From positions 62,001 through 126,000 of the forward strand of contig NIVC01002271.1 of NCBI GenBank assembly GCA_002269645.1: 64,000 bases of DNA, read 5' to 3'. Origin of the DNA: Macrostomum lignano. Taxonomy: Eukaryota. Below, piece after piece: positions 48,501-54,500 of this stretch (the stretch's first letter is position 1; each line of letters opens with the position of its first letter). The position numbers and the translations under genes were made by a program. The notes below the pieces were generated by a model, which did no database searches, had not been told where the DNA came from, and saw only the letters and a list, made by a program, of their open reading frames with translations.

Positions 48501-51500
48501 AGATAGATAGATAGATAGATAGATAAATAGATAGATAGATAGATAGATAGATAGATAGATAGATAGGTAGATAGATAGATAGACAGATAGGTAGATGGAT
48601 AGATGGATAGATAGATAGATAGATAGATAGATAGATAGATAGATAGATAGATAGATAGATAGATAGATAGATAGATAGATAGATAGACAGATAGGTAGAT
48701 GGATAGATGGATAGATGGATAGATGGATAGATAGATAGATAGATAGATAGATGGATAGACAGATAGATAGATAGATAGACAGACAGATAGATAGATAGAT
48801 AGATAGATAGATAGATAGATAGATAGATAGATAGATAGATAAATGATAGATAGATAGATAGATAAATAGATAGATAGATAGATAGATAGATAGATAAATA
48901 GATAGATAGATAGATAGATAGATAGATAGATAGATAGATAGATAGATAAATAGATAGATAGATAGATAGATAGATAGATAGATAAATGATAGATAGATAG
49001 ATAGATAGATAGATAAATAGATAGATAGATAGATAGATAGATAGATAGATAGATAGATAGATAGATAGATAGATAGATAAATGATAGATAGATAGATAGA
49101 TAGATAGATAGATAGATAGATAGATAGAGGTGGGTAGATTGGTAGCTAGGTAGGTAGCTGGATAGGTTGATTGATTGAGTGATTGATTGATAGACACAGA
49201 TACATAAGCAAAGTTTCAAGACCTTTTAACTGCTCTATACATATATATTGTTTTTCTAAGCAAGCGTTTGTTTCTAATGATCATAAAAAGTAGATTCATT
49301 TATTTAATAAAGCATTACATCGGTACTACTACACTGTTACCGTGTAGAATATGTCAGCTTTTGTATCATAGAGCTCAGTGCCCAGCCAATGCCATAACCG
49401 TACCAATGCACTATACATGAACAGGCTTTGCCGAATGCATTGGGGCCGTACAGTGCGCCTTCAGCGCCACCCTGGCATCTGTGCACCTGCACCAAAACCT
49501 GCTCAATTCGTTGCTAAGCTGGCCAGCTTTGCGTTTCTCTGCCAGCATTTTGAGCGGCCCAATCATAACCAGATTCAGTGCAGATCTAGACGAAGTAGAT
49601 CTTGTACTGCCATTCACTTTGAGATCTCTGGCCAACAGCCTGATTCAGTTGGTTGGCATTGGCATTGTCATTGCCACTTTATTCTACCTGCCAGCTCTAG
49701 CTGTTTGTCTTTCAGTAGCTGTGTTCTATTATTTCATACAAGTGAGTATTTATTTATGCCAAGGTCCTGCACGCGTGATCAGAGAGTGCCAAACTAGTAG
49801 CCAGATTATATTATATAACCTAAAATCAATTGCAATTTTAATAATGACTTTGCGCTAATCAACAAAGTTAACGGGGTGTCTTGTTCTCTACATGTATTTG
49901 TCGTTTGTATGTACTTTGTGTGTGTATTTTCTAGGCAAAAGTTTGTTGACTCTGTCTACTTACGAGTATATAAGTTATTTGAAAGTATGTAATTTAAAAA
50001 AATGCAAGATGCAATATTTTCTCATCTGCTTTAGCTACCCTAATTTTCGATGATAATGTAAAATTTCGCATGTAAATGTTTGGTTTAGAACGCGTGTACT
50101 TTGCTACGGGTATGCTTTGGTACGTGTGTACTTTGGTATATCTGTTGTTTAGTTCTAAACCAACGTATAGTACATGTACTTTAGTACATGCACCTTAATT
50201 TGTATGTACTTAGGTACGTATGTGCTTCAATTCGTATGTATTTTAGTACGCATGTACTTTAGTACGTATGTACTTAATTACGCGTGTACTTTAGTACGTA
50301 TGTACTTTAGTACGTATGTACTTTAGTACGTATGTACTTTAGTACGTATGTACTTTAGTACGTATGTACTTTAGTACGTATGTACTTTAGTACGTATGTA
50401 CTTTAGTACGTATGTACTTTCGTACCCATGTACTTAAGTGTGTTTGTATATTTAGGTAGGTAATAACTGTTACGAGTATTGATAGATGTCCCTGTGAGGT
50501 TCAAAAACCCTAAACTAGCCTACTTGTAAGTAGAATAATCGGAGCATAAAAAAATATGCTGTTGCAGCCAGTCACGCAGCCGTCGGTATGCTTGGCATTT
50601 GGCTGTGCGCCACACACGCATCTCGTCAACTGCACTCTGATCTGTTGCGCTCGCTGTTACGCCAGCCTGTTCACGCGCACGAATTACGCGCCTGCGGCAG
50701 GACTATTAACGTATTCTCTGGCGACGTGTCTCGCCTAGACATTGCCATGCCGCGTCGATGGAAATGGGTTGTACAGAGCTGCTTCTGGGTTGCGGAAAAT
50801 TTTGTCGGTTTAACGACCGTGTCGGCGTTGAGATTGTCGCCGGCTCTGCTGCCGATCGGTCTTGCCTTGTGCGCACCTTTCTGCCTTGTACAGGTGGCTG
50901 GGGTAGAGCGCATAACAATTGCATAGCAGCATCCCATGGATTGTAGTTGCTATATTGAAGCTGCGCAACAGCAGTGCTAATTGATTTTGATTCTGATTTT
51001 CTAGCTAAAGCGCTGAAAAGGGGTATTTTTTCCAGTAGTAAAACGCAAAACGCATTTTTTCATAGTTGGTTGGTTAATAAGCGTTTAATTTAAATTAATT
51101 TTATTGGAATGCAACTTGAGTTAACTAGTCGTCTAATAAAAAAATTGTGCAGAGTAATCTCAGACCTACAAATATAGCTGTTCTTCAGGTTTGATCTCTA
51201 TCCTTCAGGTTGGACCTCTATACTCCAGATTTCATCTCTATCCTTCAGGTCGGATCTGTAGCCGTTTTTAGGTTTCACTTTTATCCTTCAGTTTTATAAA
51301 ATAAAAAAATGGAAATTAATTTGTGAAAAATAATAACATCACGCAGCTGTTTGGTTAGCAATGTTTTTCGCCTATTCTAAATTCGATTCCAAGCAATTGC
51401 TAAATTAACGAATACGCTCGTAAATTCGAAGTGATTACAAAAGCGCAATACACGCCAATGCAAACCACCCGCCCAAACAAAACGCAGCGCTAGCGATCTT

Positions 51501-54500
51501 CTGGGGCGCATTTATTTCTTCGATCGCCTGTCTGAGAGCGTCCCGCCTATTGCACAACAACCTGTTGAACCGGGTGTTGGCCTGCATGCTAACATTCTTC
51601 GAATCGACCCCGCTGGGCCGCATCGTGAATCGATTTAGCAGCGACGTGAATTGCGTCGATCGCGATTTGGCCGAGAAGTGGCGCACCATGCTTCGTATTG
51701 CCTTCTGGCTATTGGAGGCTCTTATTGCCGTGTCCTTCGCGTTGCCATGGTTTCTAGTGGCTCTAATTGGCATTGCCGCAATGTTCCATGGCGTTCAGGT
51801 CTTTATTTATACTTTTAGTTGGTTTTGCGTGGTGTCGTGTTTTTGTCTCTTAACTCTTGTTGTGCACTGGTAATTATGGAAGACAAAACGCAAATGCATG
51901 CGGGGTACACGCGCACCCCGTTGCTTTCACCAGCTAATTCATATTAAAAATCAATAATTTTGCTTAACCTTGCAATATAAACAATATAACCTCTTATGTT
52001 GCTTGCCTTCGTTATTGATTGTTGTGGCTTTTAGTGTTTTTAATTTTGTGTATAGTAATGCACTTTTTGTTTTGCTTGGTACACAGATTTTATATTACGA
52101 GCGTATTGTTATATACTTTGCCAATGCGTAACCTTTACTCTTCAGTTAGCTTATTTTATGTACTTTAGTACGCATGTACTTTAGTACGCATGTACTTTAG
52201 TACGCATGTACTTTAGTACGCATGTACTTTAGTACGCATGTACTTTAGTACGCATGTACTTTAGTACGCATTTACTTTAGTACGCATGTACTTTAGTACG
52301 CATGTACTTTAGTACGCATGTACTTTAGTACGCATGTACTTTAGTACGCATGTACTTTAGTACGCATGTACTTTAGTACGCATGTACTTTAGTACGCATT
52401 TCGTTATTTTCTGAAGTATTTCTCTGGCCTACCTTTCTTCCGCTCCCATCCGACTATCCAGCCATAGCCGTTCTCATGTCGCAGTTTCTAACAGCCGTCG
52501 GCGGCACCCGCGCCTCTGTTGCCCTTTACTGGGGCCTGCTGGCCAACCTACTAAAATCGCCTGTTGTCGCTCTTGTATCTCCAGACGATGGCAAAGGCGG
52601 CGGACGAACTGTTGGCAGCGAATTCTTGCAGCGCTTTGCCGACGATCTGGCCTCGGTTGATGCCGAGATGGCGTTGGCCTGCCGATATCTGATTCAGGCC
52701 GCCTGCGGACTGCTGGAACGGGCCGCGGTGCTGTGCCAGCTGGATGTCAGCCTGTTGCTGGCTCTGCTGGCGGGCATTGCTGCCCTGCTGTTTGTACAGG
52801 TGGCCGTGTACCCGCACAGCGTTTTTAGTCCTCCGTAGATTTAATTATCTTGTCTTGTCTGGACAATTTTATTTATTTTACTATGATGATTAACCACTAA
52901 TTGTTGGATTTTCAGCTACTTTTCTGGTACGTTTCAACTTCAACTGTTTTTTGCGCACTGCATCTGCAATCAATCTAGCCTTGATTTTATACCAAGTTTT
53001 TGTGCTAGTATATATTTTGTTTCTGCTAGAACTCACTTCCCCAGTGTTCTTAATTCCCCGCTGGCTCACTTCCCCAGAATTCTGAATTGCCCGCTGGCTC
53101 ACTTCCCCAGAATTCTGAATTCCCCGCTGACTCACTTCCCCAGTGTTCTGAATTCCCCGCTGGCTCACTTCCCCAGTGTTCTGAATTCCCCGCTGACTCA
53201 CTTCCCCAGAATTCTGAATTCCCCGCTGACTCACTTCCCCAGTGTTCTGAATTCCCCGCTGGCTCACTTCCCTAGTGTTCTGAATTCCCCGCTGACTCAC
53301 TTCCCCAGAATTCTGAATTCCCCGCTGGCTCACTTCCCCAGAATTCTGAATTCCCCGCTGACTCACTTCCCCAGAATTCTGAATTCCCCGCTGACTCACT
53401 TCCCCAGAATTCTGAATTCCCCGCTGGCTCACTTCCCCAGTGTTCTGAATTCCCCGCTGGCTCACTTCCCCAGAATTCTGAATTCCCCGCTGGCTCACTT
53501 CCCCAGTGTTCTGAATTCCCTGCTGAATTCCTTAGTCTGAACTCTGTACCAGCTCACCAATTTTTCAGCTCCGCTATCTTGTGTTAATTCCCCCGTCTCA
53601 ATTCCCTACACTTTGTGTTTTAACTAATAATAGATCGGATGATGCTCTTTTGTTGCTAGGCCATGTTCCCATAGCAACTAACTGAAGCTTGCATGTAGTT
53701 GGTTAGACCACAGCATTGATAAACAGCATCTGCTTCATCTGTCGCTCCCCAATCGCAGAGAATCTTCATCAGCTCATCCCGGCAGCTGAAGCGGCTGGAA
53801 TCAACGGCCAAGTCGCCGATTTTCTCCCACTTCTCCGAGACCCTGTCTGGCGTGACCACTATTCGGGCATTCGAACAGCAATCGAATTTCAAACGAATCT
53901 GCAACGATCGCGTTAACTTTTTCAATCGCTGCTATTATCCGAATATTAGTTCGAATAGGTGGCTGGCCGTCCGGTTGGAGCTGGTTGGCAATCTGATTGT
54001 CACATTCACCTGTCTGTTTGGCGTGCTGGCCAGGGGCACCGTGTCCCCTGGTCTGGTAGGTCTGGCCGCTATCTATGCGCTCAACGTTACCCAGAGCCTG
54101 AATTGGCTGATCCGAATGACTTCGGAGTTGGAGACTAATATTGTTGCCGTGGAGAGGTGAGAATTCATTTTTATCTTATCCCATTTCAGGGATCTTAAGC
54201 TCCCTTAATCCCTATGTGCTTAGGATCCTCATGCTTAGAATTCCCAAGCTTATAATCCCCATCTTAAGATTTCATGCTTAGAATCCACATCTTTAGATCT
54301 ATGCTTAGAATCCCCATGATTATAATCCCCAACTTTAGATCCCATGCTTAGAATACCTATCTTTCGATCCCTTGCTTAGAATCGTCATGCTTATAACCCT
54401 TATCTTTAGATCCCCATGTTTATAATCCCCAGCTTTAGATCCCCATGTTTATAATCCCCATCTTTATATCCCCATGATTATAATCCCCAGCTTTAGATCC

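What the first reader, a model, noticed from the sequence alone, without database searches (positions are those of the whole stretch)
49560..52700. Variant exons keep structural residues but swap the MRP1 specificity position and the coupling helix
Manual alignment to MRP1 RFSKELDTVD(1084)SMIPE(1089)VIK(1092): all four keep the Asp1084 equivalent and a basic residue at 1092 (R, K, R, R), but the Glu1089 position is Phe (A), Arg (B), Glu (C) or Leu (D). Known: human MRP1 Glu1089 versus mouse Gln1086 determines anthracycline resistance. The NBD-contacting motif FFxxTPxGxxxNRFS is canonical only in C ([15 protein letters not shown]); it is remodelled in A ([16 protein letters not shown]), B ([15 protein letters not shown]) and D (which has a GKGGG-containing insertion). 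Inferred: splicing switches pocket charge, and A, B and D may also alter or uncouple ATPase-transport coupling.
Basis: partly seen in the sequence, partly recalled or inferred. Interest (0 to 1): 0.72.

Follow-up and report, generated by a model that had tools for sequence, protein, structure and literature searches.

The report
Four alternative exons in flatworm MRP1
A multidrug-transporter (MRP1-like) gene of the flatworm Macrostomum lignano carries four interchangeable versions of one exon, of which exactly one can be used per mRNA; this arrangement is already known for the same gene in flies, worms and molluscs, so it is a new example rather than a new principle.

Summary
Window 49425-52799 (+) holds four tandem homologous exons (A-D) of an ABCC1/MRP1-like gene. 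Two Macrostomum lignano UniRef models match its constant exons almost residue for residue. All four exons have AG/GT sites and lengths of 3n+2, and only single inclusion keeps the reading frame. The FFxxTPxGR coupling-helix motif is canonical only in C.

Column 1089 is the most variable column in the family, so a difference there is expected between exons that are 25-34% identical. 'Uncoupling' could not be tested, and the AlphaFold models do not discriminate.

Mutually exclusive exon clusters at this place in MRP genes are published for Drosophila, C. elegans and other phyla.

One new point: exon A carries the full signature (D-x-V-x-P-F-T-x-R-S-x-x-N) of a recurrent exon class. That class also occurs in a clam MRP1-like protein and in many unnamed eukaryotic contigs, usually as the first exon of the cluster. 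B and D are lineage-specific and very divergent, and I have no evidence that they are expressed.

The parts
48051..48407 (+). Upstream constant exon (end of linker, TM12, start of TM13). It ends with the first base (G) of a split codon, donor AAG|gtgagc.
   Evidence: Translation and donor. It aligns to MRP1/ABCC2. The 5' end is inferred from the M. lignano model P0121 plus an AG and is less certain.
49425..49741 (+). Variable exon A (317 nt, 106 aa). It is the 'PFTxRS' type, with Phe at MRP1-1089, and has a remodelled coupling motif [17 protein letters not shown].
   Evidence: Acceptor ..aacag|, donor CAA|gtgagt. Pfam ABC_membrane 29.3 bits. 7 of 7 class-signature residues.
50568..50893 (+). 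Variable exon B (326 nt, 109 aa). Arg at 1089, Lys at 1092, Trp at 1091 and 1093, coupling motif [17 protein letters not shown].
   Evidence: ttgcag| ... CAG|gtggct. Pfam 32.2 bits. 14 of 25 family-conserved columns kept.
51488..51798 (+). Variable exon C (311 nt, 104 aa). This is the canonical type: [15 protein letters not shown], Glu at 1089. It lacks the invariant Pro1088 and Pro1060.
   Evidence: acgcag| ... CAG|gtcttt. Best match to human MRP1, 46 bits. Pfam 39.1 bits. Present in the UniRef models P0001 and P0121.
52462..52799 (+). Variable exon D (338 nt, 113 aa), the most divergent. It has a 9-residue Gly-rich insertion in the coupling helix and Leu at 1089.
   Evidence: atccag| ... CAG|gtggcc. 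No Pfam hit when searched alone. 8 bits against human MRP1. Present in P0001 and P0121, wrongly fused to C.
53759..54156 (+). Downstream constant exon ([15 protein letters not shown]..., rest of TM15, second coupling loop, TM16-17). It starts in phase 0.
   Evidence: It aligns to MRP1 1131-1263.
55094..55907 (+). Last exon: NBD2 (Walker [10 protein letters not shown], signature LSLGQRQ) and the stop codon.
   Evidence: spliced translation reads to the stop. tblastn.
50174..50439 (+). 16-nt minisatellite (ATGTACTTTAGTACGT, about 17 copies) in the intron upstream of exon B.
52158..52399 (+). The same 16-nt minisatellite (about 15 copies, 99% uniform) in the intron upstream of exon D.
   Evidence: The unit occurs nowhere else in the 64-kb window.

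Best explanation
This is a cluster of four mutually exclusive, tandemly duplicated exons in the ABCC1/MRP1-like gene of Macrostomum lignano.

Shown:
- Each exon encodes the same module of the second membrane domain: the cytoplasmic half of TM13, the first coupling helix of that domain, TM14 and most of TM15.
- Every exon is 3n+2 nucleotides long, enters in phase 1 and leaves in phase 0. Only mRNAs with exactly one of the four read through to the normal stop. Skipping or multiple inclusion gives an early stop.
- The module carries the invariant Asp1084 equivalent and a basic residue at 1092.
- The two 'plastic pocket' positions contributed by TM14 (1089 and 1093) differ in all four versions.

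Inferred:
- Exon choice gives up to four transporter isoforms with a different drug-pocket wall and a different loop facing the ATPase domain.
- C is the housekeeping, canonical form.
- A belongs to a recurrent alternative-exon class and is most likely a functional second isoform.
- B and D are young in distribution (seen only in this species), very divergent, and possibly used rarely or not at all.
For: Structure, phase and splice sites. Only single inclusion keeps the frame. Exactly four copies, and no other duplicated exon in the gene.

Coding signal in all four (codon bias in frame 0, GC islands, stop-free frames at 1-4% chance each).

Family-conserved columns are kept far more often than variable ones (C 18/25, A 15/25, B 14/25, D 10/25, against 19-29% at variable columns). 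Hydrophobic TM14 and TM15 are retained. Exons A, B and C alone pass the Pfam ABC_membrane cut-off.

AlphaFold2 gives the TM helices of exons B and D a pLDDT of 65-91, equal to or above the rest of the model.

The gene is MRP1/ABCC2-like over its whole length (E about 1e-71 to 1e-75 against solved structures). Two M. lignano UniRef models match it, one of them A0A1I8HTH2.

The same kind of cluster is published for Drosophila MRP (8 exons), C. elegans mrp-1 (13A-D) and other phyla. Gene models that concatenate tandem variants of this region are also seen in cockroach, mosquito and strongylid nematodes.

Exon A matches 7 of 7 class-signature residues (about 7e-5 by chance). In 3 of 4 fetched loci the A-type exon is, as here, the first of the cluster.
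Against: - No transcript evidence was available. No protein in two very large databases contains exon A or B.
- The two database models that contain D are mispredictions that fuse C and D.
- A, B and D have lost the FFxxTPxGR motif, which is 79-100% conserved in about 250 other segments of this exon region from other organisms. D does not match Pfam on its own.
- No docking-site/selector RNA pairing was found.
- No sequence from a related species was available to measure selection on B and D.
Confidence: 0.7

Rival explanations
1. Only exon C (perhaps also A) makes a working transporter. B and D are relic or non-productive exons whose inclusion yields a misfolded or uncoupled protein. They are either on the way to being lost or serve only to lower the output of functional mRNA.
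For: B and D lack the near-invariant coupling-helix residues: B lacks F1063, F1064, T1067, P1068 and R1075; D lacks these except R1075, plus H1049, and has a 9-residue insertion. D scores 8 bits against human MRP1 and has no Pfam hit. Non-A variants in four other clusters all keep FFDxTPxGR. No relatives of B or D were found outside M. lignano.
Against: Open frames, correct phase and AG/GT sites are kept despite about 70% protein divergence. Codon bias in the coding frame is strongest in D. Asp1084, Gly1070, Asp1079, Phe1076 and the terminal Gln are retained. B, C and D share a Glu at the 1103 equivalent. TM hydrophobicity is intact.
Confidence: 0.22
2. The four copies are an assembly or annotation artefact (collapsed or expanded repeats, or pieces of different paralogues stitched together), not one cluster in one gene.
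For: The region is full of micro- and minisatellites. M. lignano assemblies are known to be difficult (my own background knowledge). The public models differ from the window by local frameshifts.
Against: The copies are only 25-34% identical, so they cannot be assembly duplicates. Two independent public models contain C followed by D in the same order. The same layout (TM12 exon, then several variants) is seen in four unrelated contigs.
Confidence: 0.03

Closest known systems
Drosophila melanogaster MRP (CG6214) variable exon cluster (8 mutually exclusive exons) and its insect orthologues
   Same: It is the same gene family, with tandem homologous exons in the second membrane domain and one exon chosen per mRNA (PMC6071210, PMC9741552). 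The mosquito model P0022 shows that the variable unit spans roughly the same stretch (TM13 end to ...VQ|RFY).
   Different: In insects, choice is reported to depend on competing intronic RNA pairings with a downstream docking site; none was found here. In the insect examples available here (cockroach P0122, mosquito P0022) every copy keeps the FFDxTPxGR motif, whereas here only C does.
Caenorhabditis elegans mrp-1 exons 13A-13D
   Same: It has four mutually exclusive homologous exons in the MRP1 orthologue (PMC4165533). The 3' boundary falls at the same point, just before RFYVSTSRQLK, as shown by the strongylid models P0012 and P0339.
   Different: The nematode exons are 156 nt (3n), cover only TM14-TM15 and are 50-60% identical at the protein level. 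The flatworm exons are 311-338 nt (3n+2), also include the end of TM13 and the coupling helix, and are only 25-34% identical.
Tandem exon arrays of metazoan MRP genes (Yue et al. 2017, RNA Biol 14:1399)
   Same: That study describes independent exon duplications at this gene in several phyla. I know it only through two citing papers, one of which names helminths, annelids and molluscs.
   Different: I could not read the paper, so I cannot say whether flatworms or the 'PFTxRS' exon class are covered. Its conclusion of independent origin in each lineage sits uneasily with an exon class shared by a flatworm, a clam and unnamed eukaryotes.
Human/bovine MRP1 (ABCC1), TM14 mutagenesis and cryo-EM
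   Same: The Asp1084 equivalent is kept in all four exons and there is a basic residue at 1092. Positions 1089 and 1093 line the plastic (hydrophobic) half of the substrate pocket (PMC12647609). E1089Q alters drug resistance but not organic-anion transport (PMC1488846).
   Different: Vertebrate MRP1 has a single exon here. The flatworm protein is about 40-45% identical to it in this region, and no transport data exist for it.

Membership tests
ABCC / MRP1-like ABC exporter | Second membrane domain matching ABC_membrane (PF00664) and aligning end to end with solved MRP1/ABCC2 structures | tested here: met
   E 3.9e-75 against ABCC2 and 1.6e-71 against MRP1, covering residues 950-1263; exons A, B and C alone pass the Pfam cut-off. 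Foldseek top hits are ABCC2 and MRP1.
ABCC / MRP1-like ABC exporter | Two nucleotide-binding domains with Walker A and the ABC signature | tested here: met
   The translations show GTVGAGKSS...LSGGQKAR (NBD1) and GRTGSGKST...LSLGQRQ (NBD2). The two domains cross-match each other.
ABCC / MRP1-like ABC exporter | N-terminal extra membrane domain (TMD0) of 'long' MRPs | not tested
   The L0 region is present at 39719-40375. Exons further upstream were not modelled.
Mutually exclusive exon cluster from tandem exon duplication | Adjacent homologous exons of similar length, with the same phase and canonical splice sites | tested here: met
   lengths 317, 326, 311 and 338 nt, all 3n+2, all AG...GT. 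Pairwise E values down to 1e-11.
Mutually exclusive exon cluster from tandem exon duplication | Only single inclusion gives a productive mRNA | tested here: met
   each single exon reads to the normal stop. Skipping and all 11 multiple combinations tested give premature stops.
Mutually exclusive exon cluster from tandem exon duplication | Transcripts showing that each exon is used, one at a time | not testable with these tools
   No RNA-seq or cDNA data were available. The protein databases hold only models that wrongly fuse C and D.
Docking-site/selector (competing RNA structure) control, as in insect MRP | One intronic docking sequence complementary to a selector next to each variable exon | tested here: inconclusive
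   no such set among inverted repeats of 14 nt or more. Only minisatellite self-matches and a few isolated pairs appear. Weaker or gapped pairings would be missed, and no orthologous introns were available to check conservation.
'PFTxRS' (A-type) alternative exon class of MRP1-like genes | Signature V1086, P1088, F1089, T1090, R1092, S1093, N1096 (human MRP1 numbering) | tested here: met
   exon A has 7 of 7, and B, C and D have 1 each. The expected chance is about 7e-5. The class comprises 34 segments, including Mya arenaria P0114, plus 25 more proteins.
'PFTxRS' (A-type) alternative exon class of MRP1-like genes | Lies in a cluster together with canonical-type exons, typically as the first exon after the TM12 exon | tested here: met
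   it is first in L002, L003 and L004 and last seen in L001. It is first in the window.
'PFTxRS' (A-type) alternative exon class of MRP1-like genes | Groups with the class in a tree when the signature columns are removed (common descent) | tested here: inconclusive
   the neighbour-joining tree puts exon A inside the A-type group, but bootstrap support is 10% (31% with all columns). A clade of all four flatworm exons appears in 42% of replicates. The log-odds test is confounded by overall divergence.

The most novel reading that the evidence does not exclude
The 'PFTxRS' exon (exon A here) is an ancient second version of the TM13-TM15 module. On this reading it was already present, as the first exon of the cluster, before flatworms and molluscs diverged. 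It has been kept since as a distinct MRP1 isoform with an aromatic residue at pocket position 1089 and a systematically relaxed coupling-helix motif. That would mean the MRP exon clusters are not purely independent, lineage-by-lineage inventions as published. It would also mean that a conserved, functionally different MRP1 isoform exists in many invertebrates.
Probability: 0.35. Interest if true: 0.6.

Novelty: new member of a known kind. Interest (0 to 1): 0.42.

Why it matters
MRP1-type pumps are a first line of defence against toxins, and M. lignano shows MK571-sensitive dye efflux in vivo (PMC3826144). A natural set of four swaps of the same structural module could serve as a ready-made experiment on two questions: how TM14 sets substrate choice, and how much the coupling helix can change while the pump still works. 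The module comprises two pocket residues, one coupling helix and two membrane helices.

The recurrent A-type exon, if ancient, would point to a conserved and unstudied second isoform of MRP1 in invertebrates.

On the practical side, the public M. lignano gene models for this locus are wrong (they fuse C and D and skip A and B) and should be re-annotated.

Tried and rejected
1. I looked for further copies of the exon and for a second duplicated exon in the gene. There are none; an all-against-all ORF comparison returned only repeat noise.
2. I searched 5.8 billion proteins and 1.8 billion cluster representatives for proteins containing A, B or D. The only matches were two M. lignano models with C fused to D. 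The representative library merges isoforms, so absence there is weak evidence.
3. I ran AlphaFold2 on the TMD2+NBD2 part of the D and B isoforms with a 22-sequence alignment. Mean pLDDT was 67-68 and pTM 0.48-0.49. The TM helices are confident. The coupling-helix tip is below 50, but so is the constant second loop tip, so nothing can be said about coupling. Foldseek only confirms the ABCC fold.
4. A search for docking/selector RNA pairings found nothing convincing.
5. I compared introns A-B and C-D for a shared inserted element. Only the 16-nt arrays match, not their flanks.
6. A class log-odds test with the signature columns masked gave A +1, B -7, D +9 and C -48. I rejected it as a membership test because any divergent exon scores near zero.
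7. A neighbour-joining bootstrap for common descent of A-type exons gave low support. The first attempt timed out.
8. I tried to name the organisms behind the A-type contigs. No names are on record.
9. Yue et al. 2017 is not held in the library, and no held paper describes flatworm MRP exon clusters.
10. The original E1089/Q1086 paper is not held. I used secondary citations.
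Full report
WHAT IS THERE

The + strand of the window from about 39.7 to 55.9 kb is one intron-rich gene for an ABCC/MRP1-like transporter. A construct made of the upstream exon, exon C and the downstream exon aligns end to end with solved ABCC2 (E 3.9e-75) and MRP1 (E 1.6e-71, residues 950-1263). The best database proteins are two Macrostomum lignano UniRef models. 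One is P0001. The other is P0121, which is UniRef100_A0A1I8HTH2 and differs from the window's constant exons by only a few substitutions and local frameshifts over about 1000 residues. The window is therefore from this free-living flatworm or a very close copy.

THE CLUSTER

There are four tandem exons between the TM12 exon (which ends at 48407) and the exon that begins [15 protein letters not shown] at 53759:
- A: 49425-49741
- B: 50568-50893
- C: 51488-51798
- D: 52462-52799

Each has an AG acceptor and a GT donor. Each is 3n+2 nucleotides long (317, 326, 311, 338), enters in phase 1 and leaves in phase 0. tblastn finds these four copies and no fifth, and no other exon of the gene is duplicated. 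The copies are only 25-34% identical as proteins.

Joining the flanking exons with each possible combination shows that exactly one variable exon gives a frame open to the normal stop. Skipping and all eleven multiple inclusions tested give early stops. Productive mRNAs are therefore mutually exclusive by construction.

ARE ALL FOUR REAL CODING EXONS?

- Each is stop-free over 104-113 codons, which happens by chance 1-4% of the time per exon.
- Each has positive codon-usage log-odds in the coding frame and negative values in the other two frames.
- Each is a GC island of roughly 49-61% GC. Four of the five introns of the cluster are 31-36% GC and the last is 47%.
- Against 22 canonical homologues, they keep the family consensus at 72% (C), 60% (A), 56% (B) and 40% (D) of the 25 most conserved columns, but at only 19-29% of the variable columns.
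- The hydrophobic TM14 and TM15 stretches are retained.
- Exons A, B and C alone pass the Pfam ABC_membrane threshold; D alone does not.

This pattern is what long-term selection for a membrane-domain module produces, not what neutral decay produces. It cannot show that B and D are still in use today.

A MAFFT alignment with 21 homologues and independent exon-only phmmer alignments agree on the following:
- Position 1084 is Asp in A, B, C and D.
- Position 1089 is Phe, Arg, Glu and Leu respectively.
- Position 1092 is Arg, Lys, Arg and Arg respectively.
- The FFxxTPxGRxxNRFS motif is canonical only in C.
- A reads [17 protein letters not shown] and B reads [17 protein letters not shown].
- D has a 9-residue insertion ([11 protein letters not shown]) inside the motif.

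HOW MUCH DOES IT MEAN?

The literature supports the positions chosen. E1089Q changes drug resistance without changing organic-anion transport (PMC1488846). A 2025 cryo-EM study lists E1089 and M1093 among the 'plastic pocket' residues (PMC12647609). The exon therefore swaps both pocket positions that TM14 contributes: 1089/1093 = F/S, R/W, E/T, L/Y.

Three things weaken the reading:
- Column 1089 is the most variable column of the whole region, with 13 different residues in 22 canonical homologues. Bovine MRP1 has Gln there, and E1089A barely affects vincristine or GSH transport. A difference at 1089 is what any pair of 30%-identical copies would show.
- Exon C is not simply 'the canonical one'. 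Like D, it has lost Pro1088, which is invariant in all 22 homologues, and it has lost Pro1060.
- B, C and D share a Glu at the 1103 equivalent inside TM14, which the family lacks.

The idea that A, B and D uncouple ATP hydrolysis from transport could not be tested. AlphaFold2 models of the TMD2+NBD2 half with exon D or exon B (shallow alignment, mean pLDDT 67-68) give the exon's membrane helices a pLDDT of 65-91 but the coupling tip less than 50.

WHAT IS KNOWN

Clusters of mutually exclusive exons in this part of MRP genes are published:
- eight exons in Drosophila MRP, controlled by competing RNA pairings (PMC6071210, PMC9741552);
- four 156-nt exons 13A-D in C. elegans mrp-1 (PMC4165533);
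- according to two papers that cite Yue et al. 2017, independent duplications in several other phyla; one of them names helminths, annelids and molluscs.

I could not read Yue et al. itself. Gene models in the databases that concatenate tandem copies show the same thing for cockroach, mosquito and strongylid nematodes. No held paper mentions the flatworm locus. The flatworm cluster is therefore a new member of a known kind. It differs in exon span (it includes the coupling helix and the end of TM13), in the 3n+2 length, and in how far the copies have diverged. I found no docking/selector pairing.

A NEW LEAD: EXON A BELONGS TO A RECURRENT EXON CLASS

A HMMER scan of 1.8 billion representatives with A+B+D returned many short single-exon fragments whose best match is exon A. 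These fragments, and the clam Mya arenaria MRP1-like protein P0114, share a sharp signature at the cytoplasmic entry of TM14: D-[LFY]-V-x-P-F-T-x-R-S-[ML]-x-N. That is Phe at 1089, Arg at 1092, Ser at 1093 and Asn at 1096.

- Exon A has all seven signature residues; B, C and D have one each. The chance expectation from non-class sequences is about 7e-5.
- As a class (34 segments, later 25 more proteins), these exons have a relaxed coupling motif: F1064 at 53% against 93%, F1076 at 44% against 97%, and H1049 at 59% against 99%. Exon A's 'remodelled' loop is therefore a class trait and not decay.
- I fetched four contigs that carry such exons. In each, the A-type exon sits in a cluster with canonical-type exons right after the TM12 exon.
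- The A-type exon is first of three in L002, first of six in L003 and first of two in L004. It comes after a canonical exon in L001. In the window it is also first.
- All non-A variants in those clusters keep FFDxTPxGR, unlike the flatworm's B and D.

Whether the class reflects common descent or convergence is open. A neighbour-joining tree with the signature columns masked places exon A inside the A-type group and puts B, C and D together. Bootstrap support is only 10% (31% with all columns), and a clade of all four flatworm exons appears in 42% of replicates. The organisms behind the contigs are unnamed.

VERDICT

The sequence observation is right. The gene structure is a genuine four-exon mutually exclusive cluster, and it swaps part of the substrate pocket together with the first coupling helix. 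The functional reading (a charge switch at a 'specificity position', and uncoupling) is plausible but rests on a hypervariable column and on untested inference. The general phenomenon is already known for this gene family.

The most useful follow-ups are junction counts from existing M. lignano RNA-seq, per-exon selection tests in other Macrostomum species, and a taxonomic survey of the A-type exon.

Noticed in passing
window 50174-50439 and 52158-52399: A 16-nt minisatellite (ATGTACTTTAGTACG[T/C], 15-17 copies) occurs only twice in the 64-kb window: in the intron just upstream of exon B and in the intron just upstream of exon D. The orientation is the same and the flanks are unrelated. The unit is partly self-complementary (GTAC...GTAC), so the two arrays could pair and loop out exons B and C. 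This is untested.
   Followed up: partly
window 51903-51917 and 52799-52813: A 15-nt inverted repeat (87% complementary) pairs a site in the C-D intron with the last base of exon D plus its 5' splice site (G|GTGGCCGTGTACCC). It could mask D's donor, but it may equally be a chance match among 19 inverted pairs.
   Followed up: no
P0001 and P0121 (UniRef M. lignano models) versus window 51488-52799: Both public gene models for this locus skip exons A and B and fuse exon C (whole or truncated) to exon D through non-canonical joins. They also carry local frameshifts relative to the window. The locus is mis-annotated in the public proteome.
   Followed up: partly
window 51488-51798 (exon C); also exons B and D: Exon C, otherwise canonical, has Ala in place of Pro1088, which is invariant in the family, and Met in place of Pro1060. 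B, C and D share a Glu inside TM14 (human 1103 equivalent), where the family mostly has Gly, Ala or Ser.
   Followed up: partly
L003 6437-15940; L002 5565-7321; L004 9992-12914; L001 3367-10300: Unnamed eukaryotic contigs from ENA metagenome assemblies carry MRP1-like genes with clusters of 2 to 6 tandem variants of the same exon. L003 has six. The organisms are unknown, and the closest named relatives of their canonical exons are about 46-53% identical.
   Followed up: partly
window 48444-49128: A (TAGA)n microsatellite of about 172 units fills most of the intron between the TM12 exon and exon A. It starts 37 nt after the donor site.
   Followed up: no
window 47631-47982 and 53032-53525: There are two different 33-nt tandem repeats (about 11 and 15 copies), in the intron before the TM12 exon and in the intron after exon D. 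Both give long spurious open frames.
   Followed up: no
window 37794-38847, 40559-42718, 58040-58979, 60199-62671: These are long stretches of short-period repeats that read as open frames in all three phases (HTPxSPHS..., [14 protein letters not shown]..., PHPLPHPP..., [12 protein letters not shown]...). They are probably satellite DNA rather than genes. They were not examined.
   Followed up: no
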